From contig OZ004608.1 in assembly GCA_963924565.1 (NCBI GenBank), forward strand, positions 9,672,001 through 9,736,000: DNA of 64,000 bases, in the 5' to 3' direction. A program made the translations under genes and the position numbers. Position 1 is the stretch's first letter. The number at the start of each line of letters is the position of its first letter. The DNA is from Ascidiella aspersa. Its lineage: Eukaryota. The notes under the pieces were generated by a model. It worked only from the letters and a program-made list of their open reading frames with translations. It made no database searches and was not told the DNA's origin. This document shows, piece after piece, positions 13,719-60,294 of the stretch.

Positions 13719-14462
13719 TCATTCAGGTTCAGGTTTACCAACATTTTCAACGATTTTCGGTGATGGCTCTTCACTTTCTTGCAATTTACCAGGCTTTGGG
13801 CGCTTGTAAACCAGTTCTGGGTTTCCCTCCATGGAGGAAGTGTACCTGGCCGCAGTAAACAAAAAGTCACTTAGTCTGTTTACATAGCGCAGCACACTGT
13901 CGTCTACTTCTTCCTTTTCGTGTAGCTTGGAGATCTGCCTTTCTGCTCTCCGACAAACGCTCCTCGAAACGTGAAGGTAGCTGCTTGTTTTGCCACCAGA
14001 GGGCAGTATGAAGTTTTTCAGTTCAGGCAGGTCGTTTGTGTATGTGTCGATCCACGACTCAAGTTCACTTACTAGGTCCGGGTCAAAATCAGTGCGAGCC
14101 TTCTGTTTTTCGGTGGCAGAAGAAAGCGGGGTGGCAACATTGGAAGCCACATCCTGCAACACGCATTGTACTTTCTGTAGCGACTCTGAAAGTTCTTCGA
14201 AGTTTTCTTTCTGCCACGATTCTTTTATTAGTTCCATGGCAAAGCCGATGTTACTGCTCAACTCGTCAACTGTTCCTAAGGCTTCAAAAGCATTGTCATA
14301 CTTGATTCTTCTTTCCCCAGTAAAGAGGCTTGATGTGCCCCTGTCACCAGTTTTTGTGTATATTTTCATGTTTCTTTTGGTGGTTGATAAATCTCTTGCT
14401 TGCGACATAAGACGAAAATTATACATCCATTTTCTTGACAGATTTTTAGAAGTCTGCATCAT
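13719..14462 (-). CDS. MMAB: Cob(I)alamin adenosyltransferase, mitochondrial (PduO type), single coding exon
   Basis: KIYTKTGDRGTSSLFTGERR, FEALGTVDELSS, FILPSGG, RSVCRRAER and YVNRLSDFLFTAAR are hallmark PduO/MMAB motifs. Basic N-terminal extension fits a mitochondrial presequence. Confidence 0.95.
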   Translation of the reverse strand: MMQTSKNLSRKWMYNFRLMSQARDLSTTKRNMKIYTKTGDRGTSSLFTGERRIKYDNAFEALGTVDELSSNIGFAMELIKESWQKENFEELSESLQKVQCVLQDVASNVATPLSSATEKQKARTDFDPDLVSELESWIDTYTNDLPELKNFILPSGGKTSSYLHVSRSVCRRAERQISKLHEKEEVDDSVLRYVNRLSDFLFTAARYTSSMEGNPELVYKRPKPGKLQESEEPSPKIVENVGKPEPE

Positions 14463-45300: not shown

Positions 45301-46085
45301 AAAATGTTATAATATTAAATAAATACAATATTAAATCTTCATTTATATATACTTTTTTAAATGATAAAAAACATTAAAATCTATGCAAAAAGTTAAAAAT
45401 CTTCCAAACACATTTAAGAGGTAGATACCTGTTCGAGAAGAAGCTTGTTTATCAGATCACTTAGTTGTTCCCCGGTTGTTGTTCCTAACACTGAAAATGG
45501 TGATTCACCAACTTTGTACCTAGCAAGCATTTAAAACAAATGTTTTATTTATTTCAGAAATACATGAAAGGTGTCTCTCTAATTGAGTCTAATAATTTTT
45601 TTTAAAACTTGGGCGCTAATATATAATCCCATGAGAGCGTTCAAACAATTATTAAAGCAAACATACAATATGGGGGGTAATACTAATTTAGGGAATAATG
45701 AATGGTCGGAATGGTCGGAACGCTCACTAATTTAAGTGTTACCCCGTTAAAACAATCATTAAACCAACGCACAATATTTGAGTTAAGGTGGGTCAAGTGT
45801 TATTATATTTAATAATAATACTGTGAGCATTCCGACTATTCATCATTGCGTAAATTAGTGTTACCCCAATGTGGGTTAAGGTGTCGGCTATAGTGTTTGG
45901 GTGAGGATGGGTCAAGTAATATTATTTGACATTATTGCTTACCCTACCCAAACACTAATTCGCACCCTAACTCAAATAATGTTCGCTGTGGTATAAAGCT
46001 AGACCAGCGCCAAGGTTTATTCTAGTTTAACTTAGCATATTTACCTTTCTTGTTGAGTAAAAAACTTGACCTGAATTTGAGCCAT
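39398..46085 (-). CDS. WDR12: Ribosome biogenesis protein WDR12 (Ytm1), NLE/UBL domain plus WD40, about 429 aa
   Basis: Twelve phase-consistent exons: 46085-46045, 45519-45429, 44876-44772, 44429-44312, 43761-43651, 43106-42952, 42587-42447, 41974-41834, 41178-41073, 40490-40361, 40101-40029, 39475-39398. Motifs: MAQIQVKFFT, FDFVVNGEFLR, DWISGV..ILTGSYD, TLSGHTEVV, DRHVRLWDPRS, IVSGGADCK. Confidence 0.93.
42125..42343. mobile_element. hAT-type MITE
   Basis: TIRs caggggtgaacaaact / agtttggtaacacctg; near-TSD atttacac/atttagac. Confidence 0.7.
43075..43346. repeat. Perfect 136-bp tandem duplication spanning the WDR12 intron 5/exon 6 boundary
   Basis: 43075-43210 is identical to 43211-43346 (agatgaacttgcaag...cgggtttctc). 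Confidence 0.95.
44051..44195 (+). mobile_element. tRNA-derived SINE
   Basis: A-box-like actcagttggtagagc and B-box gagttcgaacct, followed by a non-tRNA body shared with 33213-33304. Confidence 0.75.
45612..46011. mobile_element. Foldback MITE with a nested second MITE at about 45675-45867
   Basis: Outer termini ggcgcta.. / ..ctagaccagcgcc. Inner TIRs gggtaatactaattta / taaattagtgttaccc with a near 8-bp TSD aatatggg/aatgtggg. Confidence 0.75.
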
Positions 46086-47006
46086 TTTTTGTTGTAGCTC
46101 AAAAATACCCTTTTTCGTGCTAAGTTCAGATAGCAAAAGAGTGGGTAACAAAGTGTTAAGCCTTTTTGTGTAAATATCTAAACCTAAACTTTACATTACA
46201 ACTTAAAAAAGTTTTTTTAGCAACAGCATGTTTTATTTTCCGCACTCAAGCGTAGAAATAAATCAACCGTCACAATAATCATTTTTAGTCATAGAATACT
46301 TTCTAATTTGGTAAATTTACCGTATATTTTTTTGTTAAACTATTAAAAAAAATTGTATATATGTAACGCACCATAATTTACACGGGTTACATTTTGCTTT
46401 ACATCAGTTTAAAAAGCTGATTATAGAACTTGAACACACTTTAGTTGGCTATGACCCAAACAGTTTACAAGTTCCAATTTTATTGACAACGATAAAGACA
46501 CCTCAAACGCACAAAATGACAGCAAAGACATTAGATACATATAAATCAAAAGATCAGCCCTCTGTCACAGTATATTTACGTTATTGCATATTGTTTGTAT
46601 CAAAGAGACTAAAAAACCCTTTGATGTTCACATGCTGCATTAATATTGAAAGACCCGTAACCTAGAAATATGCTGGATATAGTTTAGTAAGAAAAGACTG
46701 AAAAACTTGAGGTCTTTTGAAAATGGTGTTGATGAAATGCGAAACAAATATTATCGGTTATAAATATACCTGTTACACTGAAGTTATTTCTTAGAAGGGT
46801 AAACAAATTTAAAATTGCAACTAAAATATAAGGCCAAATTAATTGTGCAAATAATATCGTACTTTATATAAAGACTAAGCGTATCTACGACCCCCGATTA
46901 AGAAAATCATTTAAATATTTGTGCAAATAATCTGCATCGTAACCACAAACAGGATTTTGCCCTGCGTAATGTTTTTGGCAAGTAAAATAACGCTGTTTGA
47001 TCTTTT

Positions 47007-50000
47007 CTAAACAACTTTGGGTGCGGGGTACTGGCATATACAGCCCCGCAATTTGTCAAAACATCCTGTTTCCAGCCATTCGGTTGTATTCGAGCCAGCC
47101 GAAATGCCAATCGACAAGCAGCCGGCACCTTTAGTCCTCCTCAGCCAGGTTTGGTTCACAGCAGTGCCATCAGTAAAGACGTATATCGAGCCCCTTGTAG
47201 TTCCTTTATACCCGTCGATCCAGTATCTTACGCTTTGCAACTTTCTGCCGAGGTATTGCTGTGAACATTTTAACCAAAAAATATAGTTGTTCACAATGTA
47301 AGAAAAAACCTCAAGGGCTTGTTTAGGCTTCATCGTTAAAGGCGATAATTACAATTCACACCTAAACCCAGTGGTTCTTAATTTTCTAATTATTGTGACG
47401 CTACTGGAAAAGTTTATTTAACTTGCGACGCACCAAGTGATAAGAATTTTACTATTCTTTATTGATTTGCTGTTTGTTTGTTTCAAAAACTCAAGATCAA
47501 TTGCTGTATTTTTTCGTTACATCGAGTTCCAACGCATATATAAGAAAATACCATTATTTGAATATTTACTAACGCAATTCGTTTCAGATACGAAACGGAA
47601 TCGAAATCGTTCGGATAAATTAAAACGAGATAATATACTCATAATAATTCAATTTAACCTTCTTCTTTTCAAAAGAACAAGTTTTAGTTCTATCTGCGAT
47701 ACAAGATAACTATGTTTTATTTTAACCTTATAAAAACAGCTCACAAACCTGAACATTAATGTCTTTAAACATTGCCAGCTTCGCCCCAGAAGTTTCCGTC
47801 CAGCACTTGTACTCAGCCTCGATGTTAGAAATCCCAACGTCCCAAGTCAACAACGAGTAGCAACTCGAGTTGACCCGAATGTGATCTGACTTTGTGCAAC
47901 CTGAAATATCAGCGAAAAACATGCGAAATTACCAACACAAGTTGTAAAAAATATATTTGAACACAAAATATTTGATATAAATTTAGTCCGATTAAAGTGA
48001 GTGATATTGCTTTAAGCTTAGTTTACTTTTTCCATTTACTATAGTAAACCAATTTTCGTATCACCTTATTTGTACATAGAGCGAAGTTTTATATAACATA
48101 TTTTGCTTCAAAACATCATTTAATCAATTTATCATCGTTAAGGTATTGCAACAATTTCAAAAATTGTAAAAAAAAACGCCTTAGTATTTTCAAATACCCG
48201 CCTTTAGTATATCAAGTGATCGAAACTTTTTTTAACGTAGGTGTTGATAACACGGTTGAAGACCATGTTATAAAATTCAAACAGTTTGAAACAGACCGAG
48301 CAACACAACATTTACCTTGGACGTTTGTTGCAGTTGGAGTAGACGATGTACCCCGCCACGAAGCGTTCTGTCTTAAAAACTGAAGCAAAACCCTTTGGTT
48401 GTCCTGCAATAACAGTTTACATCTGCCTCAGTATGCATAAATTCTTAGGAAAGCTGAACTAAAATAAAATATAAGGAAATAGGCCAGTGTTTCTTAATCA
48501 GGTGAACAGTTCACCCCAGGGTGAATAACATTTTTGCAGGGGTGAACCAACCAAAAGGGGTGAATAAGGGTGAACCGTCAGAAATGAAATTTGTAGATTT
48601 GCAATGGTAAAATTTACCTTGAGTTGATCTTAACAAAGATGGAAACAACCTAAGTCATTTTGTGCTGTTATATATAGACGAGATAGTTTTATCATATCAT
48701 GAGACGAGGGTGGAAATCTGGAGATAGATGCTAGGGTTGAACAAAACTAAAAAAGCACTGTAATAGGCCCATAGATAAGCTGGGTCTGAAGTTTAAATTG
48801 CCTCCCGGTCCAAAACAAAAATTGTCACAAATAATCTAACCTGGATAGACGAGACTTTTTGGCGAATCCATTCCACTTCGTCGAAAGTGACGTCAGCATC
48901 ATAAATAACTCCCTCGTCGTTGTCGAATTGCTGTTGCTGGAGACTCTTTTGCTGGATCACTACATTAAGGTATTTGAGCAATATGAACTCGAATTCAAGT
49001 TATTTCCGACGTTCATACGGACTCTGGAATGTAGCCTAAGACTCACATTTATTATCAGACAATTTTTCACTTAAACTTTTTTGTTCTTTATGAAACCGTT
49101 AAGGTTTCTAAAAATGTCCAATAGTTAACATGCGCCATGACTATTTGTTAATGTTTGGCTGTTACAGAGGTTATTCTTTTAATTATGTGTATTTGCAAGT
49201 GAACTTTTACCTTTGTAATTTAAAAGAGCGCCTTTAAAGCGAAAAAAGTTATGTGGTCTGTTTTAAGTAAAATATGCCGTTGCAAAGCAATTATACATTG
49301 TTATTTGTTAGGCTCAAAACAAATCAAAAAAAAAGAAAAAATTTATACAATGTTAAAAAGAAGCATTGCGACACAGAGGCTCACACAAAAATATATTATC
49401 TAGTGATTTTGCATGTTGTAAGTATACCCATCAACCTTGGGATGTGATCCCCCTTGCCCTAACATTTTGTTTCGGCTCCTAACTTACTAAAAATGTTAAT
49501 GTAAATACAGTAAAAGTTAATCGCCTTACTAAGAAAGATAACGACGCATAGCAGCATTATAAATCCAACTGTGAGTCCGAACAGGTACATTTTAATGCAG
49601 AAAGGAAGTTTCGGTCGTCGAGGTCGATCGCCAGACTGAGTCGAAACTAGAAAAAAAGTAAAAACAAGTAAGTAACTTTTATTTTTTTGTTCATATTAAA
49701 CAAATAAAGAAAATAATTAAAATCAGAGACGGGAAGCTTTTAGAATAAGCTCCATCGCACGTTATGCGTGACGTTGTTTGAACTGTGGCGTGCAAAATTA
49801 AATTAATCATCTTTACTGAGAATTCAGTCGCCATTATGACGTTGATAAAGAATTGATGAATAGCCTGTAGCACGAAAAAAAATTGATTAGTATCACACAT
49901 TACAAACGTTAACAATAAGCATACAGACTTTTAACTCATGTATGTAAATATTGGAAACAACAAGTACACATTCGTAAGCTTTACAGTTAAACGAAGTTAA

Positions 50001-50414
50001 GTTCAATCTCATGATTTTTACAATTGCTGTTGAATTGGACACCAATTTACGCAGAGACTGTATTCAGGGTTCGGGAACCTATGGCTCGCGTGTCATATAT
50101 GGCTCTTTTTGTGAAATCATATGGCTCTTTTGATAAAAGAATCTTGCTTGCAGAAAAATCTAAGCTATCGTTTCTCCGCACGATATCAAATTAAACTCCA
50201 CGCGGGGCTATCAGCGTGCCTTTAGTTTAGATTTACATATCTAGTAGTATGCTATGAAACGGTCACGCTATTGCACAAGACGTGTTAAAACGGCGACAAA
50301 CTTCCGTGCAGTAATTAAAGCACCTCTCATCGGGACGTTGACATATCTTTCACCTTCGCTGTCGTCTCGACTCCACTCCGAATCGGCCACGCTGAAAGGC
50401 CGGTCAGCCGACAT
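47007..50414 (-). CDS. Type II transmembrane C-type lectin-like receptor, copy A (short cytoplasmic tail, about 262 aa)
   Basis: Six exons: 50414-50354 (MSADRPFSVADSEWSRDDSE), 49646-49530 (TM LFGLTVGFIMLLCVVIFL), 48959-48841, 48403-48316, 47900-47749, 47258-47007. CTLD motifs SCYSL, AEYKC..GAKLA, YWIDG, GCL, WLETGC..RGCICQ. An extra in-frame ATG lies at 50420. Confidence 0.8.
48485..48759. mobile_element. hAT-type MITE shared by both lectin copies (second copy about 54550-54837)
   Basis: cagtgtttcttaatc...aagcactg with TSD aaataggc/taataggc; presence in both copies shows it predates the duplication. Confidence 0.7.
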
Positions 50415-52380
50415 GTTCATTTGTGCAGCAACGGCAGTGCGCACAATATCCTGCGTTTAGTTTTCGTTATTTCGTAGCACACCAGCTGCAAAAGACAATT
50501 CTTGTTTTGGTTGTAATTCTTTACCAGTCTAAATTGTGCTTTGTTAAAATGTCTGTCAAAATAAGACTGTTTTTTCCTTTAGGTATTTTCGTTCTTGCCG
50601 GAGATCACACATATGTTAACCTTATGTGACCTTCCTGGCAAAGCAGCATCTGTGATTTTCAGTACGAATACGCCACTGTGCGTTGCAGGATGCAACTTTA
50701 CTAGGTTGTGACAATGCTTTGCTAACTGTAACCTTGCATTTTGTAAAGATATTTGTTTATTTTAACTTAATAAACTTCACAGAAAAGTTGCTCGAAAGAT
50801 GATTCATATTGCAGTGTGAAACCATTAGGTTTGGCACGTAAGTTCGTTTTGACTTGGCCTCAGTCAAATCAAAAAAATTCTATTGCACTTAAAAGCTGGC
50901 TATAGCAGAAAACTTTTTCATTCTTTTGTGCAACCACCATGGTTTCATATTGTTGTCATATGAGATGGCTATCGCACAAAACAAAGGGTTTATTTTCGCC
51001 TAGTTTAGCTCAAATTGTTCAGTAGTTTCGCCTCGTAAGCCTTAAATCAGCAACTTCCCATTTAATTGCTTTGTTTACTTGCAACGCCTATTCACCCGAT
51101 TCGTCAAGAAACTTACCGAAACACATCGGTGAACTTACGAAAAAAACGCCGATTCAACTTCGGTAAAATTATAATTTTCTATCCCAGGATATAATCTCGC
51201 TCGATTGGATCATTTACCAGCGATGCGTATCGCGAACAGACGATAAATGCTAGGGTTTGCATATATTTTTTTCCAATTGGCGTATTGGACAGGATAAGGC
51301 AATATATAACGTAGTTTTAAATAAAACAAAACGTAAAATGTAATAAAAAAGTTACAATCAAACCCTATGATACCAGGCCGATGTCTTTTGTGGCAAACGC
51401 GTTGTTAAGCCACTCCTAGCTTCCCAGGCTGACCTGATTCTTGAAAAACTGGTTCACTAAATGTACTAAAAGCGGAATTAAAATAAATTAAACAACATAA
51501 TGTAGGTATAAATGTTGTAATTACAACTCCACCACCCCAGTCTGTATTTATAGGAAATGGGCGCACACTGATGATTTAAATTAGTAGCATGCACATTGCA
51601 CACCTAAATTTGCAACACCAGAATAATAAAAATTTGTTACAGCACACCCGAGATCTTAGCGAAAGGTGCCAAGAAATGCAGACTTGGTCCACCCTAGATC
51701 TGAGTAGATGGTTAATCCCTCAATTTGGCGCTGGCTGGTCAAGAATCCTACCACAACGAGCATTTTTGGGGGGTTAGGTATTGGGTTTTGGTATAGGTTA
51801 AGCAATAATATTAAATATAATAATACTTGACCCATCCTCACCCAAACACTAACCGACACCCTAACCCAGGGGTTCTTAACCTATATTGTATGTTTTACCC
51901 CCTTTAACAAAGATGAATATCAGATTCAAACCTGCCCCAACCCCCTCCCCTCCCCCCCCCCCCCCTTTTGCGGCCGCCAATTTTTTATGGACGAAATTCA
52001 ACGCCAAAATAGGATGATATATACGCCGAAGGCGTGGTTTTAAGCAAGCATTTCAAGCCAAAGATCGCTGGCGGTAAGGCACTAGAATGCAATCACCCCT
52101 CCCCCCCCCCAATATATAAAATAATGCTTAATTATTAAAAAACAAAAGTAACAAATTACATCAGTTAAATTCAATGCGATGGCTGCCCTTGTTTTAACGA
52201 ATTGTTCAAATCATTCTAGTTTTGTCTTTGTAAACTGGACAGTTTTGACTCAAAAAAGGACCGGTTTTTGCTCATCATACTTCGATGACCATTTAGGTAA
52301 AATAGCAGGTTTCATGGTACTGTTTGAAAATGTTTCCATGCACAAAGCATACTAAGGAATTTGCCGATCATCCTTAAAAA

Positions 52381-55300
52381 GATATGTAACACACAATACT
52401 TTACACGGGTTACCTTTTGCTTTGCATCAGTTTAGAAAGCTGGTTATAGAACTAGAACACACTTTATTTGGCTAGTTCAAGACCCAAACAGTTTACAATT
52501 TCCAATTTTATTGACAACGATAAAGACACCTCAAACGCACAAAATGACAGCAAAGACATTAGATACATATAAACCAAACATCGACCCTCTGTCACAGTAT
52601 ATCTACGTTATTGCATACTGTTTGTATCAAAGAGACTAAAAAACCCTTTGATGTTCACATGCTGCATTAATATTGAAAGACCCGTAACCTAGAAATATGC
52701 TGGATATAGTTTAGTAAGAAAAGACTGAAAAACTTGAGGTCTTTTGAAAATGGTGTTGATGAAATGCGAAACAAATATTATCGGTTCTAAATATAGCAAT
52801 ATCTGTTACACTGAATTTATTTCTTAGAATGGTAAACATTAAAATTGCAACTAAAACATATCCGGTCAACATCAAATTGTGCAATGAATATCGTACTTAA
52901 ACGTATAATATTTAGTACAAAAGACCAAGAGTATGAATAACCCCCGAGTACGAAAATGATTTAAATAATTGTGCAAATATTCTGCATCGCAACCACAAAA
53001 AAGCTTTCGCCCTGCGTAAATGTTTTTTGGCAAGTAAAAAACGCTGCTGGATTTTTTCTAAACAACTTTGGGTGCCGGGTACTGACAGATACAGCCCCGC
53101 AGTTTGTCGAAACATCCTGTTTCCAGCCATTCGGTTGTATTCGAGCCAGCCGAAATGCCAATCGACAAGCAGCCGGCACCTTTAGTCCTCCTCAGCCAGG
53201 TTTGGTTCACAGCAGTGCCATCAGTAAAGACGTATATCGAGCCCCTTGTAGTTCCTTTATACCCGTCGATCCAGTACCTTACGCTTTGCAATTGTCTGCC
53301 GAGGTATTGCTGCGAAGATTTTAACCAAAAGATATAGTTGGTTACAATGTAAGAAAAATCCTCAATTAAGGGCTTGTATAGGCTTAATCGTTAAAGGCGA
53401 TAATTATATACCTTAGCACAGTGGTTCTTAATTTCTAATTATTGTAACGCTACTGGAAAAGTTTATTTAACTTGCGACGCCAAAGTGATAAGAATTTTAC
53501 TATTCTTTATTGATTTGCTTGTTTGTTTCAAAAAATCAAGACCAAATGCTGTATTTTTTCGTGACATCGATTTCGAACGCATATATAAGAAAATACCATT
53601 ATTTGAATATTTATTAACGCAATTCGTTTCAGATACGAAACAGAATCGAAATCTTTCGGATAAATTAAAACGACGGACCAGGTATCGCGCCGCACAGTTT
53701 AAGAACCTCCGCCTAGACCAGATAATATACTCATAATAATTCAATTTACCCTTCTTTTTTAAAGAACAAGTTTTAGTTCTATCTACGATACAAGATAACT
53801 ACCGGTATGTTCCATTTTACCCTTATAACAAAACTGCTCACAAACCTGGACATTAATGTCTTTAAACATTGCCAGCTTCGCCCCAGAAGTTTCCGTCCAG
53901 CACTTGTACTCAGCCTCGATGTTAGAAATCCCAACGTCCCAAGTCAACAACGAGTAGCAACTCGAGTTGACCCGAATGTGATCTGACTTTGTGCAACCTG
54001 AAATATCAGCGAGAATCATGCGAAATTGCCAACACAAGTTGCAAAAAATATATTTGAACACAAAAAAATTTGATATAAACTTTTTCCATTTACTATAGTA
54101 AACCAATTTTCGTATCAACTTATTTGTACATAGAGCGAAGTTTTATATAACATATTTTGCTTCAAAACATTATTTAAGCAATTTATCGTCGTTAAGTTAT
54201 TGTAACAATTTTAATTAGTTTTTCAGTTATAAAACCCGCCTTAGTATTTTCAAATACCCGCCTTTAGTATGTCAAGTGATTGAAACTTTTTTTAACGTTG
54301 TTATTTATAACACAGTTAGAGACCATGTTACAAAAGTCAAACAGTTCAATACAGACCGAACATGACGACATTCACCTTGGACGTTTGTGGCAGTTGGAGT
54401 AGACGATGTACCCCTCCACGAAGCGTTCTGTCTTAAAAACTGAAGCAAAACCCTTTGGTTGTCCTGCAATGACAAACAGTTTTACATCTGCCTCAGTATG
54501 CATAAATTCTTAGGAAAGCTGAACTAAAATAAAATATAAGGAAATAGGCCAGTGTTTCTTAATCAGGTGAACAGTTCACCCTAGGGTGGATAAAATTTTG
54601 CAAGAGTGAACCAACCAAAAGGGGTGAATAAGGGTAAACCGTCAGAAAGGAAATTTGTAGATTTGCAATGCTAAAACTTAGCTTGAGTTGATCTTAACAA
54701 AAGTCGAAACAACCTAAGTAATTTTGTGCTGTTATATATAGACGAGATAGTTTTATTATATCTTTAGACAATTGGTAAATGAAACCTGGAAATAGATGCT
54801 AGGGATGAACAAAACAAAAAACGTTTAAGAAGCACTGTAATAGGCCTATAGATAATCTGGAACTGGAGTTTAAATTGCCTCCCGGTCCCCAACAAAAATT
54901 GTCACAAATAATTTAACCTGGATAGACGAGACTTTTTGGCGAATCCATTCTACTTCGTCGAAGTTGACGTCAGCATCATAAATAACTCCCTCGTCGTTGT
55001 CGAACTGCTGTTGCTGAAGGCTCTTTTGTTGGATCACTGTATTTGAGCAATATGAACTCGAATTTGAGTTATTTTCCGACGTTCATGCGGGGTGTGAAAT
55101 ATAGCTTAAGACTTACATTTATTATGGGACAATTTTCACTTAACCTTTTCTGTTCCTGATGAAACGTTATAAGGTTTCTAAAAATGTCAAATGTATAGTT
55201 AACATGCGCCATGACTATTTGTTAATTTTTGGCTGTTACAGAGGTTATTCTTTTAATTATGTGTATTTGCAAGTGAACTTTTACCTTTTTGATTTAAAAG

Positions 55301-58300
55301 AGTACCTTTAAAACCAAAAAAGTTATGTGGTCTGTTTTTAGTAAAGAATGCCGTTGCAAAGCAATACATTGTTATTTGTTAGGCTTATTTTATAGATTAA
55401 AAACAAACATTGCGACACAGGGGCTCACACAAAAATATATTATCCAGTGATTTTGAATGTTGTGAGTATACCCATCAACCTTGGAATGTGAACCCCCTTG
55501 TCCTAAAATTTTGTTTCGGCTCCTAATTTACTAAAAATGTTAATGTAAATACAGTAAAAGTTAATCGCCTTACTAAGAAAGATAACGACGCATAGCAGCA
55601 TTATAAATCCAACTGTGAGTCCGAACAGGTACATTTTAATGCAGAAAGGAAGTTTCGGTCGTCGAGGTCGATCGCCAGACTGAGTCGAAACTAGAAAACA
55701 ATAAAAACAAGTAACTTTCATTTTTTTGTTCATATTAAACAAATAAAGCAAATAATTAAAATCAGAGACAGGAAGCTTTTAGAATGAACTGGCTCTTTTT
55801 GTGAAATCATATGGCTCTTTTGATAAAAGAATCTTGCTTGCAGAAAAATCTAACCTATCGTTTCTCAGCACGATATCAAATAAAACAGCACTCGGGGCCT
55901 TCCTAACCTTATTTTTCCTTTTTTAACACAAATTTTCGGCGCCTTGCGCGAATCCTATTTGTTTTTTGAGACTGTTATCTCGTTTGAAGGAATTTTGAAT
56001 ATCTAAAAGGCCCTATTCTTTCAACGGAAATCCGTAATCAAAGAGCGCAAACTCAACTTAGCTAATTTTTGGTGCATAGCATGTTCCGTCTTCTAAATGA
56101 GAACCAAATAAACGGCATTGCTCAATTTACTAATTTTTGCCAATTGCCAACCTATAACTATGTTAAAAAGTATTATATGGCTCTCATGGAGATAGAACAA
56201 ACCATATTTGGCTTATATTGCCCCCTCAGCTAAAAAGGTTTTCGACCCTTGCTGTATATAGTTCAAATGCAAAGAAACCAAGTTGAGCCAACCTTTCAGC
56301 GGAACAGATTTCTGAGATTTGCCTTTGTTCTCTTCCACTGGTGAGGTCGGTCCGTCGGAGGTCATCATGGAGCGGGCAGCTTCCACATGGGGTGGAATGT
56401 CGTACATCCGACGCTCGGCGTGGAAATCTGCATACAACGACTGCTTTAAGAAAAACCTCACATATCACCGGGCAAATATTTTTAACAGTACATATATACC
56501 CAATCGAAAAAAGTAATCTATCGATTTGGGGTATATAACTGTTACATATTTCAGTGAAGAAAACATTTGGCATACGAAGGCTAGAACTCTAATATAAGAC
56601 CCTATTTATCGCGTCGTAAAATAACCTAATGAAAATGATATCTGTGTTATAGCTTATGGCAAAGACATTCTACGTAGGGAGGAATGTCGTGCATTCGACC
56701 TTCGGCGTTGAAATCTGCATACTACGATAGATGTACTGTATATGTGAAAACGGAAATCACCTTGACCCTTGCAAGATAAATGTCGACCTTAACAATGAGA
56801 TTCGGTCGAATTAAAAGATATACTGACGATGCCATTGCTGGCGAAATACAGTATATATATATCCTTTAAGATATTTTAATAGTGTCTGACCTGAATTGCT
56901 TTTCTACAGTAGTCTGCTGTTACATCGACAGATTTAGGAAAAACGTCACATGTTATCGGCGACTTTTTTACCAGGATACATACCCCAATCAACACAAGTA
57001 AACTATATTATTTTACTGAAGAAAACATTTGACATACGAATGCTGTACGCTAATTTAAGACCCTTTTTATCGCGTAGTAAAATAACTTAATCAAAATAAG
57101 AACTGTGATGTTTGGCTTATGGCAAATGATCGATGTACAATTAATTAGATTTTTATTTGTACATGATAAGGTGCATTCCAAATTCACGTACTGATAAAAA
57201 CAATATGCCTGTTCAAAATATATAAAATGCAATTCGGTAAGCACCGGCCTACGGTTTCCTTTTCCTGGATAGCAAAAGGTCTGTATTGAATGCAAATTTG
57301 TCTTTCTTAGGTTGGACCAGTAGGAATAAAGTATATTTCGTCCTAAATTGCATTTAAGATACAAAACACTTTAATGGACTTGCTGTTAGATTGCTATCAA
57401 ATGGAAACCCAAGTAATAACAATAGTTTAACTAAAGGATTCAACCCAACCTAAGTGAGTCCATAATAAGATCGAAGGAGTTCACATTAATAGTTAAGGAG
57501 GTTATATATATATATAACCAAACAGCCGCCTCACCCCCACAATTTGTGAGCTTTTTACTGCTGTTTATTTTAACTAGTTTTAAACACTTGTTTAAAAAGA
57601 GGGTCGTTTTAAATGAGGGGGGGGGGGCCTTAACGGCGACAAATTTGAGCTATCAGCGTGCCTTTAGTTTAGATTTACATATCTAGTAGTATGCTATGAA
57701 ACGGTCACGCTATTACACAAGACGTGTTAAAACGGCGACAAACTTCCGTGCAGTAATTAAAGCACCTCTCATCGGGACGCTGACATATCTTTCACCTTCG
57801 CTGTCGTCTCGACTCCACTCCGAATCGGCCACGCTGAAAGGCCGGTCAGCCGACATGTTCGTTTGTGCAGCAACGGCAGTGCGCCCAATATCCTGCGTTT
57901 AGTTTTCGTTATTTCGTAGCACACCAGCTGCAAAAGACAATTCTTGTTTTGGTTGTAATTCTTTACCAGTCTAAATTGTGCTTTGTTAAAATGTCTGTCA
58001 AAATAAAACTGTTTTTTCCTTTAAGTATTTTCGTTCTTGCCGGGGATCACACATATGTTAACCTTATGTGACCTTCCTGGCAAAACAGCATCTGTGATTT
58101 TCAGTACGAATACGCCGCTATGCGTTGCAGGATGCAACTTTACTAGGTTGTGACAATGCTTTGCTAACTGTAACCCTGCATTTTGTAAAGATATTTGTTT
58201 ATTTTAACTTAATAAACTTCACAGAAAAGTTGCTCGAAAGATGATTCATATTGCAGTGTGAAACCATTAGGTTTGGCACGTAAGTTCGTTTTGACTTGGC

Positions 58301-58534
58301 CTCAGTCAAATCAAAAAAATTCTATTGCACCTAAAAGCTGGCTATAGCAGAAAACTTTTTCATTCTTTTGTGCAACCACCATGGTTTCATATTGTTGTCA
58401 TATGAGATGGCTATCGCACAAAACAAAGGGTTTATTTTCGCCTAGTTTAGCTCAAATTGTTCAGTAGTTTCGCCTCGTAAACCTTAAATCAGCAACTTCC
58501 CTTTTTATTGCTTTGTTTACTTGCAACGCCTATT
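52381..58534. repeat. Segmental tandem duplication, copy B
   Basis: Aligns with 46361-51092. Lacks the equivalent of about 49750-50100. Confidence 0.9.
53058..57856 (-). CDS. Type II transmembrane C-type lectin-like receptor, copy B (long cytoplasmic tail with YDIP, about 307 aa)
   Basis: Seven exons: 57856-57796, 56427-56293 (DFHAERRMYDIPPH...VPLK, 135 nt, phase 1-1), 55690-55574, 55036-54918, 54463-54376, 53997-53846, 53309-53058. Shared exons are near-identical to copy A. Confidence 0.8.
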
Positions 58535-58589
58535 ACAGTAAAGCGTCACGGCACCTCCCCGCTTTGCATGGCTAGCATACATTGATCTT

Positions 58590-58613
58590 ACTTCCGGCAC
58601 ATATGTGACGTCA
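58590..58613. promoter_or_regulatory. ETS (ACTTCCGG) plus full CRE (TGACGTCA) motifs, candidate promoter of lectin copy B
   Basis: Both motifs read directly from the sequence, about 730 bp upstream of the copy B ATG on the minus strand. Confidence 0.4.
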
Positions 58614-60294
58614 TCCGCATTTCCTGCAGTTATTTTGTAACTTGCGTAGGACGCTGACTGGCAACCTGGGCAATATAAGACAACAGGTCGTTGTTTTTGA
58701 CTTTTTGTTATCTTTTATCGTAAAAATACCGTTTGGAAAATATGGCTGGCGTAAAATTACTTAAAAATAAACTTTTGGTATAGGTCAAACCCGGCGCAGC
58801 ACAACGTCTTGTTTATCTGCGCATTCTTTTACGTATATGTTCAACTTCGAAAATAGACTTTAGATTTAACCTGAGTTTTATAAAGACTCGTAACCCTTTG
58901 TCCATTTATGAAACAACGCCTGTAAGCTATTTTAGGACTTTTTCCATTGTGATAAGCCCAGACGGGTATTAACCAAAAGGGCGCCTGCTCTGATACCAAA
59001 ACAACTTTATTCGTTCAGTGCCCACTTAGTACTCTTTAATTTATTTTAAGGAACTGTACACAGGGTTTCTGCCCGAATTTTCAAATCCGTTTTTTCTAAC
59101 TTTTACCATTTTACAACTTTTAAAAGAAATTTCTTTGGGCACTGCGATCGTAGAAAGTGGTGATGACGGTGAACTGGTGATGCACTTAATCATGGTTCAA
59201 TGTTACATATCCCATGATCTAGAAAAAAACGTTTGGTTTTTGTTGCTGCATCTAATCAAAAAGTAACTTCAACTAGAACGCCTCTTAATCGAATAAATAA
59301 AATATCTAGCTCTAAGTCAGCTTCCAATGAAACCTGAACAGTTGAACACACATATGTGTGTTAACAACTGAAATCTAGCCCTTCTAAAGCTGCTTTTTGA
59401 CCAACGATTCTAAGTCAGCTTGCTATAAAAGCTTTCCAAGAAGTCCCAGTGCCGACAATATATAGTTAGCACTTACAATTTTGGTGTACACATATAACGT
59501 CTGCGTTGTATTGTTATGCTTACTTTCGTATTGTCGATTAAAATGTAACTGTTTGTTTCGTTTTGTTGCGCATAAAGTATTTAACTCACTTACTCGTCAT
59601 TGAAATGGAAATTGCAACTTTAATAAGCAGGGGCGCCATTGAGACCATACGATAACCGTCTAATGTCGCTACACAAACGTTCATCAAACAAAACAACAAT
59701 TAGTCCTGTATATTCAGCTATATATGTTTTCAGAATAAAGTTAGAATGCTTTAATATGTGAATTGGTTAAATTTAAGGGTACGTGTAGGCTACCGCTCTT
59801 GAGTGATAAACAATAGTCGTTTTATGTGGTTACTGAAAAGGGAATCACATATCCAAATCGCGATTACACCAGTTCAAAAAGCCCAAGCCGCCATTTCTAT
59901 CTTCAAGACAAATTAGTCGCCCAAAATTTAACCGGCAGAAACCCAGTTTGATGTTTTATTCAAACATTTGAAAATAGATTGTGTTTAATATTGAGCCCCA
60001 TTTCGTCATTACAATAACACCAAGGTCCATTGAGAAGTTGTCTGTTAAAAAAACGACTTTTATGTACCGATTTACTAAAAGCGGTCGCATTGAAAACATC
60101 GCCTTTTTACGACGACGAGATCTCACAAGTGCGATTACTTCCAAAAACACACAAGTGGGTAAAAGAAATAGGCGAACAGGCGCTTCTTTGTTGCGACACA
60201 AGTTCACGCAAACGAGCGACGCCGCGAGACCATTATCGCGTCACAGTGGAACCCGCCTACAGTCGCGGTTATTGACACTATCAGCCGCGCGCCT

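What the first reader, a model, noticed from the sequence alone, without database searches (positions are those of the whole stretch)
47007..57856. Candidate nascent paired receptors: duplicated type II C-type lectin-like genes differing by a tyrosine-motif cytoplasmic exon
Seen: two tandem genes have intact frames and splice sites and nearly identical TM, stalk and CTLD. I found only two residue changes (DVTF/DVNF and GRKL/GRQL) against several synonymous changes, six of them in the stalk exon. Copy B has a 135-nt phase 1-1 cytoplasmic exon (56427-56293) encoding RMYDIPP. Copy A lacks the roughly 1.8 kb containing it, yet its exon 1 still splices in frame to the TM exon, leaving a tyrosine-free tail apart from the juxtamembrane MY. 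Known: YDxP is a Crk/Nck SH2-binding consensus, and vertebrate NK-complex lectin receptors form pairs with shared ectodomains and different tails. Inference: a signalling receptor plus a decoy or modulator in an invertebrate immune or recognition locus.
Basis: partly seen in the sequence, partly recalled or inferred. Interest (0 to 1): 0.75.

Follow-up and report, generated by a model that had tools for sequence, protein, structure and literature searches.

The report
Duplicated lectin-like membrane genes, one tail exon
Two neighbouring, almost identical genes for a membrane protein with a lectin-like outer domain are both kept intact by selection, and one has lost the DNA that holds a predicted extra inner-tail exon, but no RNA shows that either gene or that exon is used.

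Summary
Two minus-strand tandem genes (A 47007-50414, B 53058-57856) have intact GT-AG models. A has 6 exons (262 aa) and B has 7 (307 aa). The copies differ by 18 coding nucleotides and 2 residues. dN/dS is 0.034 and dS (0.099) is close to intron divergence (0.087), so both are under purifying selection. The head is a divergent C-type lectin-like domain: Pfam is silent on the exon pieces, but a profile hits solved CTLDs and Pfam-positive lectin exons in the same genome. DNA depth in another individual puts B at full diploid dose, which favours true duplication over tandemly assembled alleles. The 1750 bp missing from A look like a deletion. The 135-nt tail exon is coding-like and unique in the genome, but it remains a prediction. 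One RNA run (6% sampled) has zero depth on six of the seven coding exons of B, and its only reads on the TM exon overrun it; no listed joint is a splice. The "signalling receptor plus decoy" reading is weak. There is no ITIM or ITAM, the TM exons are identical, there is a single YxxP, and the flanking genes are not immune genes. Earlier scan notes describe paired-receptor-like type I lectin families elsewhere in this genome, but not this pair.

The parts
46359..51092 (-). Duplication unit A (gene A plus flanks)
   Evidence: Colinear blastn blocks to 52382-58534; repeat families D1-D17.
52382..58534 (-). Duplication unit B (gene B plus flanks)
   Evidence: In DNA run X6, 13 B-only bins have mean depth 6.85, against 6.27 expected for diploid dose.
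50354..50414 (-). A exon 1 (MSADRPFSVADSEWSRDDSE, ends in phase 1). An extra in-frame ATG lies 6 nt upstream in A only.
49530..49646 (-). A TM exon (phase 1-1): basic juxtamembrane stretch, then a 19-aa hydrophobic span
   Evidence: Kyte-Doolittle 2.66; 5 K/R against 1 D/E before the span. 117 of 117 nt identical to B.
48841..48959 (-). A stalk exon 1 (phase 1-0)
   Evidence: 7 nt differ from B: 5 synonymous plus the T/N codon.
48316..48403 (-).
47749..47900 (-). A CTLD exon 1 (N-terminal half; Cys at positions 1, 13, 32)
   Evidence: 46% identical to an exon in metagenome locus L005.
47007..47258 (-). A CTLD exon 2 (C-terminal part, with stop codon)
   Evidence: Profile hits to solved CTLDs and to Pfam-positive Lectin_C exons of the same genome.
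57796..57856 (-). B exon 1
56293..56427 (-). B predicted cytoplasmic cassette exon CY (135 nt, phase 1-1, holds RMYDIPP)
   Evidence: GC 0.55 against 0.35 in the intron. Codon log-likelihood is best in the predicted frame and above all 2000 intron windows. Unique in the genome. No RNA read.
55574..55690 (-). B TM exon
54918..55036 (-). B stalk exon 1
54376..54463 (-). B stalk exon 2
53846..53997 (-). B CTLD exon 1
53058..53309 (-). B CTLD exon 2 (with stop codon)
55899..57648 (-). B-specific 1750 bp of intron 1, absent from A. It is a mix of unique DNA, dispersed-repeat pieces and an old internal duplication.
   Evidence: Present in X1, X2 and X6.
56667..56727 (-). CY' : degenerate upstream copy of the CY acceptor and first 38 nt (DFNAEGRMHDIPPYVE). 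Could be read as a 48-nt phase 1-1 mini-exon (56714-56667) or a pseudo-exon.
49747..50099 (-). A-specific 353 bp in intron 1; B has 5 nt here. Single copy in the genome.
50207..51092 (-). Promoter, exon 1 and start of intron 1 of A. This block is 98.3% identical to 57649-58534 and ends exactly at the 1750-bp indel.
   Evidence: 1.9% divergence over the 678 nt upstream of the ATG, against 8.7% in introns.
52450..52800 (-). Conserved distal 3' flank, probably 3' UTR, with AATAAA. About 97-100% identical to 46430-46770. It holds the only sizeable non-repeat RNA cover: depth up to 6 in gene orientation, against 0.25-1.5 in four other low-copy bins.

Best explanation
This is a true, fairly recent tandem duplication (dS about 0.10) of a lineage-restricted gene. 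The gene encodes a type II membrane protein: an acidic N-terminal cytoplasmic tail, a basic juxtamembrane stretch, one membrane span, a two-exon stalk, and a divergent C-type lectin-like domain that lacks the calcium and sugar-binding motifs. Both copies have been kept as working protein-coding genes.

The ancestral first intron held a coding-like 135-nt phase 1-1 cassette exon (CY). Copy A lost it through a 1750-bp deletion with a 2-nt microhomology junction. A is therefore fixed in the short-tail form. B can make the long-tail form, and possibly both forms if CY is skipped. The 5' 886 bp (promoter plus exon 1) were later homogenised, so the two genes probably share their regulation. The pair is best read as two tail isoforms divided between duplicates.

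Shown: the anatomy, the selective constraint, CTLD homology, and the copy dose in one further individual.
Inferred: use of CY, the direction of the indel, shared regulation, and any signalling role.
For: - Models and phases.
- Selection: Sd 16 over 172.7 synonymous sites against Nd 2 over 604.3 non-synonymous sites. dS 0.099, dN 0.0033, ratio 0.034, Fisher p 2e-9. Intron distance is 0.0865, so the exons are not simply homogenised.
- CTLD: profile A2 against PDB gave 22 hits at E<=10, of which 18 are CTLD chains, and all 4 hits at E<=0.01 are CTLD chains. The own-genome profile search found 4 distant exons, and all 4 are Pfam Lectin_C above cut-off. P0002 has Lectin_C at E 7e-4. The Atlas gives Lectin_C as a lead for P0001.
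- Type II topology.
- True duplication: 13 B-only depth bins in X6 average 6.85 (sd 3.26), against 6.27 expected at diploid dose and 3.1 at half dose.
- Deletion in A: the B-specific segment holds an internal duplication of 76-86% identity, older than the roughly 91% A/B identity. It is composite and not a single mobile element. The junction is TAGC|CCCG with GC microhomology.
- CY is coding-like. A intron 1 has no coding-like candidate exon.
- CY DNA is present in X1, X2 and X6 with the frame intact.
Against: - No RNA support. In X7, 7.79 M records were read (about 6% of the run). Depth is zero in the bins of six of the seven coding exons of B. The TM bins hold 0.26-0.75, about 200 laid letters on a 117-nt exon, so this looks unspliced. 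None of the 15 listed joints is a predicted splice (22 more were not shown).
- Open phase-compatible segments are common by chance.
- Polymorphism in CY (1 synonymous, 1 P>S) is no lower than in its flanks.
- In X6, the letters at A/B-diagnostic sites are 70-100% A-like rather than 50%. Copies therefore exchange sequence or are polymorphic.
- Fully cross-mappable bins reach 9.6, not 12.5.
- The depth baseline assumes an assembly size of 308.6 Mb and even sampling.
- The A deletion junction itself was not checked in reads.
- The outgroup locus L005 could not polarise the indel.
Confidence: 0.5

Rival explanations
1. Plain redundant tandem duplicates. CY is not a used exon but a GC-rich relic in intron 1 of B. 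Both genes splice exon 1 straight to the TM exon and make the same 262-aa architecture, so there is no tail difference at all.
For: - No RNA read or joint on CY.
- 78% of shuffled introns give an open phase-compatible segment of 135 nt or more.
- The GC-rich island is open in a second frame as well.
- The acceptor has a weak pyrimidine tract.
- CY shows no reduced polymorphism.
- CY has no relative anywhere in the genome.
Against: - GC rises and falls close to the predicted exon ends.
- Codon log-likelihood is 0.308 per codon in the predicted frame, the best of the 3 frames, within the range of the true exons, and above all 2000 intron windows.
- Phase 1-1 keeps the frame.
- The sequence is single copy and retained in X1, X2 and X6 with the frame intact.
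Confidence: 0.3
2. Two divergent haplotypes of one locus were assembled in tandem. The difference would then be an exon presence/absence polymorphism of a single gene.
For: - Earlier notes of the scan call the genome a sea squirt (not checked here). From recall, such genomes can be very heterozygous.
- X6 shows mosaic A-like letters next to B-specific DNA.
- Shared bins reach less than twice the B-only depth.
- No read or contig spanning both copies was seen.
Against: - B-only depth in X6 is 6.85 +/- 0.9 (SE), against 3.1 expected for one haplotype.
- Depth rises where A reads can cross-map: the fit is 7.05 + 4.99 x the cross-mappable fraction.
- Intron divergence is 8.7% with many indels.
- A 1289-bp spacer that does not match the DNA upstream of B lies between the units.
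- There is no N gap in the window.
- X1 contigs total 301 Mb, about the haploid assembly size.
Confidence: 0.12
3. One reading: a nascent paired receptor. B signals through phospho-YDIP, which recruits Crk/Nck-type SH2 adaptors. Tail-less A binds the same ligand and acts as a decoy or modulator in immune recognition.
For: - The ectodomain is the same apart from 2 residues.
- The promoter block is near identical.
- YxxP is the Crk/CrkL SH2 motif according to the titles and abstracts listed.
- Tunicate type II CTLD receptors related to CD94 are known on blood cells (PMC5465252 passage).
- Non-synonymous polymorphism in the CTLD in other individuals (R>W, T>A) is compatible with a recognition role.
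Against: - There is no ITIM, ITAM or YxxL/I in any cytoplasmic exon.
- The TM exons are identical and have no charged core residue.
- A single YxxP in 44 residues is expected by chance in a few per cent of such peptides (my estimate).
- CY is not shared with any other gene of the genome.
- The scanned neighbours are not immune genes.
- There is no expression data.
- dN/dS of 0.034 shows no diversifying selection on the head.
Confidence: 0.1

Closest known systems
Vertebrate paired C-type lectin-like receptors of the NK gene complex (CD94/NKG2A versus NKG2C, DCIR/DCAR, NKR-P1, Ly49). PMC3533184, passages read.
   Same: Type II topology, a single C-terminal CTLD, adjacent genes, almost identical ectodomains, and a long-tailed and a short-tailed member.
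   Different: The long tail has no ITIM. The short member has no Arg/Lys in the membrane span, and the TM exons are identical. No adaptor link is known. The CTLD is only distantly related: Pfam is below threshold on the exon pieces.
Tunicate CD94/NKR-P1-related receptors BsCD94-1 and CiCD94-1. PMC5465252, passage read; the primary paper was not read.
   Same: A type II membrane protein with one CTLD that lacks sugar-binding residues, in a probable tunicate.
   Different: Relatedness was not tested because their sequences were not at hand. Neither appeared among the 7 hits of the all-protein search. They are described as expressed on blood cells, whereas here no expression is shown.
Division of splice forms between duplicates (subfunctionalization of splice forms). 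PMC4417111 and PMC4494069, listing and start of abstract only.
   Same: After duplication one copy loses a phase-symmetric cassette exon, so each gene is fixed for, or biased to, one isoform.
   Different: Alternative splicing of the ancestor, and of B today, is not shown.
Large type I C-type lectin receptor arrays with interchangeable tyrosine tails on the same chromosome
   Same: Same genome and chromosome. The CTLD exons found by my profile 1.5-2.8 Mb away are Pfam Lectin_C. The theme is the same: similar heads on different tails.
   Different: Those are type I, number over 100 copies and are canonical Lectin_C. This is a two-copy, type II, highly divergent CTLD whose tail difference comes from exon loss rather than from swapped tail modules.
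YxxP scaffold receptors that bind CRK/CRKL (DCBLD1/2; PMC6029619, listing only)
   Same: A membrane protein with a cytoplasmic YxxP.
   Different: From recall, those carry several YxxP motifs. Here there is one, and nothing shows that it is phosphorylated.

Membership tests
C-type lectin-like domain superfamily (Pfam PF00059 Lectin_C) | Match to the Pfam Lectin_C model above the gathering score | tested here: not met
   The six exon pieces were scanned separately at E<=1 and gave no Lectin_C hit. The domain is split over two exons and the joined protein was not searched, so this is a weak negative. The relative P0002 scores 20.7 bits against a cut-off of 22.6.
C-type lectin-like domain superfamily (Pfam PF00059 Lectin_C) | Profile-level sequence similarity to proven CTLDs, in register with the C-terminal part of the domain | tested here: met
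   Profile A2 against PDB: 18 of 22 hits at E<=10 are CTLD chains. The best are the IgY receptor (E 4.8e-5), PLA2R CTLD (1.4e-3) and ovocleidin-17 (2.5e-3). In the own genome, 4 of 4 distant hits are Lectin_C exons at profile positions 41-107.
C-type lectin-like domain superfamily (Pfam PF00059 Lectin_C) | Six-cysteine long-form pattern (C0, C0', C1-C4) and a WIGL-type core motif | tested here: met
   Cys at positions 1, 13, 32 of C1 and 47, 66, 75 of C2, plus one extra at 73. WIDG stands in place of WIGL. The assignment of cysteines to the canonical positions rests on recalled domain knowledge.
C-type lectin-like domain superfamily (Pfam PF00059 Lectin_C) | CTLD fold | not testable with these tools
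The only pointer is the Atlas model of relative P0001, with TM 0.43-0.51 to Lectin_C clusters (a lead only).
Calcium-dependent sugar-binding C-type lectins | EPN or QPD triplet and a WND motif | tested here: not met
   C2 reads WLRRTKGAGC and EWLETGC at the corresponding places. The motif definitions are recalled.
Type II single-pass membrane protein | No signal peptide, one hydrophobic span, positive-inside, glycosylation sites C-terminal to the span | tested here: met
   Acidic N-terminus. A 19-aa window scores Kyte-Doolittle 2.66. 5 K/R against 1 D/E precede it. All 4 N-x-S/T sites lie in ST2, C1 and C2. An in-frame stop lies upstream of the ATG. No dedicated predictor was run.
Immune paired receptors (definition in PMC3533184) | Highly similar extracellular regions encoded in a small gene cluster | tested here: met
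   2 residue differences in 262 shared positions; the genes lie 2.6 kb apart.
Immune paired receptors (definition in PMC3533184) | ITIM in the cytoplasmic region of one member | tested here: not met
   The regex [ILVS]xYxx[ILV] is absent from E1, CY and TM. The only tail tyrosine motif is YDIP.
Immune paired receptors (definition in PMC3533184) | Short-tailed member has Arg or Lys in the membrane span to bind an ITAM adaptor | tested here: not met
   The TM exons are 117 of 117 nt identical. The span YLFGLTVGFIMLLCVVIFL has no charged residue.
Immune paired receptors (definition in PMC3533184) | Expression on overlapping immune cells | tested here: inconclusive
   One RNA run of unknown tissue was about 6% sampled. 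Depth is zero on six of the seven coding exons of B; the reads on the TM exon overrun it and look unspliced. The near-identical promoter block suggests shared control only.
Splice-form subfunctionalization after duplication | Ancestral gene alternatively spliced; duplicates each keep one form | not testable with these tools
   This needs cDNA of B and of a single-copy outgroup. L005 has a single copy, but its upstream exons could not be found.

The most novel reading that the evidence does not exclude
A two-gene paired receptor caught at birth in an invertebrate chordate. One intronic deletion removed a tyrosine-motif cassette exon from one of two duplicates. Gene conversion keeps the promoter of both copies the same. 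One cell would then display a signalling receptor (phospho-YDIP to Crk/Nck-type adaptors) and a tail-less decoy for the same ligand. This would be a route to paired receptors that needs neither an ITIM nor a charged membrane residue.
Probability: 0.08. Interest if true: 0.6.

Novelty: new member of a known kind. Interest (0 to 1): 0.3.

Why it matters
If both genes are expressed and CY is used, the pair is a clean, datable example of one small deletion turning a cassette exon into a fixed difference between duplicates. The ectodomain is kept almost unchanged (dN/dS 0.034) and the promoter is homogenised.

It would also add a very divergent, lineage-restricted branch of type II lectin-like membrane proteins. 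The all-protein search found only two true relatives among 1.84 billion representatives.

For immunity it is only a lead. Nothing here ties the genes to immune cells or to signalling.

Tried and rejected
- **Pfam on six exon pieces:** no lectin hit, only sub-threshold COLFI and DUF3048_C on C2. Read as noise.
- **Word search with C2:** nothing. It only sees proteins of 46-145 aa.
- **All-protein HMMER search with C2:** 7 hits at E<=1e-3. I dropped 5 (P0003-P0007): four FG-GAP repeat proteins and one unclassified repeat protein, matched through a short GS.YVF.DG-like stretch. I kept P0001 and P0002.
- **PDB with C1 alone:** 0 hits.
- **Own genome with C1, C2 or CY as single proteins:** only the window's own copies.
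- **Rfam on 45500-59500:** 0 matches at E<=0.1.
- **Fold of the conserved 3' block:** z-score -0.33, no structure signal.
- **Outgroup locus L005/L004:** C1-like and C2-like exons were found. E1, CY, TM and stalk were not (best E 0.1-2). The indel could therefore not be polarised that way.
- **A-specific 353 bp as a mobile element:** rejected, single copy.
- **B-specific 1750 bp as one mobile-element insertion:** rejected. It is composite, CY is unique, and only short flanking pieces are dispersed repeats.
- **A second, alternative tail exon hidden in A intron 1:** rejected. The best candidate has a log-likelihood of 0.045 and GC 0.28.
- **Repeat-mediated duplication:** no shared repeat at the unit ends.
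- **Organism:** I could not check it. "Sea squirt" comes from earlier notes only.
- **Supplements:** none were asked for, and no claim here rests on them.

All searches were exon by exon.

Full report
**What is there**

The window has no N. Between 46.3 and 58.5 kb, a segment of about 4.7 kb (A, 46359-51092) recurs as a 6.2-kb segment (B, 52382-58534). The match runs in colinear blocks of 89-95% identity. The 886-bp block at the 5' end of the genes is 98.3% identical. A 1289-bp spacer separates the units. It does not match the DNA upstream of B, and no shared repeat marks the unit ends.

Each unit carries one intact gene on the minus strand, with GT-AG introns and compatible phases.
- A has six exons, 789 nt, 262 codons.
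- B has seven exons, 924 nt, 307 codons.
- The frame between the stalk exon (ends in phase 0) and the first lectin exon (starts in phase 1) closes only through an 88-nt exon (48403-48316 / 54463-54376) that the finding does not mention.
- B's extra exon CY (56427-56293, 135 nt, phase 1-1) encodes (D)FHAERRMYDIPPHVEAARSMMTSDGPTSPVEENKGKSQKSVPLK.

**What the protein is**

*Topology.*
- The N-terminus is acidic and no coding exon can lie upstream, because an in-frame stop precedes the ATG.
- The third (in A, second) exon has 5 K/R against 1 D/E, followed by a 19-residue span with Kyte-Doolittle 2.66.
- All four N-x-S/T sites lie after the span.

This is type II topology read from the sequence.

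*The lectin-like domain.*
- Pfam found no lectin domain in the separate exon pieces, and the word search found nothing.
- The all-protein HMMER search with the last exon gave 7 hits. Two are real relatives: P0001 at 8.9e-10 and P0002 at 9.4e-8. The other five are repeat proteins matched through a short repeat: four carry FG-GAP, and P0004 is unclassified.
- A profile of the last exon of A and B plus the two relatives hit solved structures. Of 22 hits at E<=10, 18 are CTLD chains; the other 4 are three LytM-type hydrolases and a mandelate racemase. All four hits at E<=0.01 are CTLDs. That those molecules are CTLD proteins is my recall of their names.
- The same profile found four distant exons 1.5-2.8 Mb away on the same chromosome. 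All four are Pfam Lectin_C above cut-off, at profile positions 41-107.
- The six canonical cysteines are present, WIDG replaces WIGL, and EPN/QPD and WND are absent (motif definitions recalled).

The head is therefore a divergent, probably non-sugar-binding CTLD. I left the joined step out throughout.

**Are both copies real genes?**

The shared exons differ at 18 nucleotides. Fourteen are synonymous, and two codons carry two changes each (T/N in the stalk, K/Q in the CTLD).

Counted per exon on whole codons by Nei-Gojobori:

| Measure | Value |
|---|---|
| Synonymous differences / sites | 16 / 172.7 |
| Non-synonymous differences / sites | 2 / 604.3 |
| dS | 0.099 |
| dN | 0.0033 |
| dN/dS | 0.034 |
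| Fisher p | 2e-9 |
| Intron 2-5 distance | 0.0865 |

Synonymous sites have drifted about as far as the introns, while replacement sites barely moved. Both lineages have therefore been under purifying selection since they split. Had one copy been a dead gene since the split, I estimate it would have added about 25 replacements.

**Duplication or two alleles?**

*Depth in X6.* X6 is raw DNA from another individual. 1936 M letters were read, so about 6.27x is expected on 308.6 Mb.
- The 13 non-repeat bins where A reads cannot cross-map average 6.85 (sd 3.26).
- Half dose would give about 3.1.
- Depth rises with the cross-mappable fraction. The fit is 7.05 + 4.99 x fraction, r 0.42.

This favours two loci at full dose.

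*Results that do not fit cleanly.*
- The two bins with a cross-mappable fraction of 0.6 or more (0.64 and 1.0) reach only 9.6.
- At A/B-diagnostic sites, X6 shows 70-100% A-like letters instead of 50%.
- No piece spans both copies.
- The A deletion junction was not examined.

I put true duplication at about 0.8.

The B-specific segment with CY is present in X1, X2 and X6.

**The 1750-bp difference**

- A equals B with 55899-57648 removed. The junction reads TAGC|CCCG, with GC shared by both B flanks.
- The segment is a mix. CY and its near flanks are unique in the genome, while short pieces on either side are dispersed repeats.
- Two stretches are very high-copy repeats by depth.
- It contains an internal duplication of 76-86% identity. 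That duplication includes a degenerate copy of the CY acceptor and first 38 nt, called CY' (56727-56677).

The internal duplication is more diverged than A is from B, so the segment most likely predates the gene duplication and was deleted in A. This is an inference. The only outgroup, metagenome contig L005, has a single homologous gene with the same C1/C2 exon split. Its tail, TM and stalk exons could not be recognised.

A also has 353 bp of its own where B has 5 nt. This segment is single copy in the genome. A's intron 1 holds no coding-like exon candidate.

**Is CY an exon?**

*For:*
- GC is 0.55 against 0.35 in the intron. The rise and fall lie close to the predicted ends.
- Codon log-likelihood is 0.308 per codon in the predicted frame. 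This is the best of the three frames, within the range of the real exons, and above all 2000 intron windows. The intron windows also trained the background, which flatters the contrast.
- The phase is symmetric.
- The frame is intact in three further data sets, with one synonymous and one P>S change.

*Against:*
- An open phase-compatible AG..GT segment of 135 nt or more arises in 78% of 300 shuffled introns.
- The GC-rich island is open in a second frame.
- There is no relative anywhere in the genome.
- There is no RNA.

I put it at about 0.6.

**Expression**

X7 is RNA-seq raw reads. 7.79 M records were read, about 6% of the run.
- 139 reads were laid, 128 of them only partly, mostly on intronic repeats.
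- The bins of six of the seven coding exons of B have depth zero. The TM bins have 0.26-0.75. That is about 200 laid letters on a 117-nt exon, so the cover overruns the exon and looks unspliced.
- None of the 15 listed joints is a predicted splice. 22 further joints were not shown.
- The main non-repeat signal is depth up to 6 at 52400-52800, with the first mate on +. In a usual stranded library that means minus-strand RNA.

That block is the distal 3' flank. It is 97-100% identical between A and B over about 330 nt, carries AATAAA, and is present only in these two places in the genome. It may be a 3'-biased trace of one or both mRNAs, or a separate transcript. It does not show which copy is on.

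Expression of the coding exons therefore remains unshown. Selective constraint argues that it exists somewhere.

**Interpretation**

The DNA-level picture fits a duplicated type II lectin-like membrane protein whose copies differ, if CY is used, only in tail length. The 5' block ends exactly at the indel and is 1.9% diverged against 8.7% elsewhere. The best explanation is gene conversion, which would give both genes the same promoter.

The pattern of one duplicate losing a phase-symmetric cassette exon matches the known division of splice forms between duplicates (PMC4417111 and PMC4494069; listing and abstract start only).

Measured against the definition of paired receptors in PMC3533184 (passages):
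- Met: similar ectodomains and gene clustering.
- Not met: ITIM, and a charged membrane residue in the short-tailed member.

YxxP is the Crk/CrkL SH2 motif according to the listed titles and abstracts. That YDxP fits Crk and Nck best is my recall. A single such motif in 44 residues is weak evidence.

Two further points cut against an immune recognition role:
- The eight largest ORFs elsewhere in the window include a cobalamin adenosyltransferase gene (Pfam E 1.9e-56) and an LRR_6 exon. The other six have no family, and none is an immune gene.
- dN/dS shows no diversifying selection.

Type II CTLD receptors related to CD94 are described in tunicates (PMC5465252 passage). Relatedness to them was not tested.

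**Context from the scan**

Earlier notes (AI, unchecked) call this a sea-squirt genome. They describe large type I lectin receptor arrays with interchangeable tyrosine tails 2.2-3.3 Mb before this window. My profile hits at 6.90-8.14 Mb of the same chromosome are Lectin_C exons, which agrees in part. The organism was not checked by me.

**Verdict**

- This is a new, very divergent member of a known kind: a type II lectin-like membrane protein in a tandem pair, with a probable tail-exon loss in one copy.
- It is of modest interest until cDNA shows the two forms.

Noticed in passing
window 52450-52800 and 46430-46770: About 330 nt of the distal 3' flank of both genes is 97-100% identical, while the DNA between it and the stop codon is only 60-85% identical. 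It carries AATAAA and occurs only twice in the genome. It holds the only sizeable non-repeat RNA-seq cover, in gene orientation. There is no Rfam match and no fold signal (z -0.33).
   Followed up: partly
window 56667-56727: A degenerate upstream copy of the CY acceptor and first codons (DFNAEGRMHDIPPYVE). It can be read as a 48-nt phase 1-1 mini-exon and is part of an older internal duplication of intron 1 of B.
   Followed up: partly
window 54600-54799, 56600-56999, 55800-56199, 52200-52399: Intronic and spacer stretches with DNA depth 5-50 times the local level in X6. They also carry RNA reads. An opposite-strand joint at 56792/56900 points to an inverted-repeat mobile element.
   Followed up: no
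window 53189 and 53225 (CTLD exon 2 of B): Non-synonymous variants R>W and T>A appear in about 40% of X6 reads and in the X2 contig. The lectin-like head is therefore polymorphic at the protein level in other individuals.
   Followed up: partly
window 50415-50420 versus 57857-57862: Copy A has an extra in-frame ATG two codons upstream of the shared start (MNMSADRP...). In B this codon is ACG.
   Followed up: no
window 13719-14462 (minus): A single open reading frame of 247 aa for a cobalamin adenosyltransferase (Pfam E 1.9e-56), apparently intronless in this intron-rich genome.
   Followed up: no
L005 4733-5344: The intron upstream of the homologous lectin exons in the 29-kb metagenome contig holds an open frame that looks like a reverse-transcriptase remnant. 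This is by eye; no search was run.
   Followed up: no
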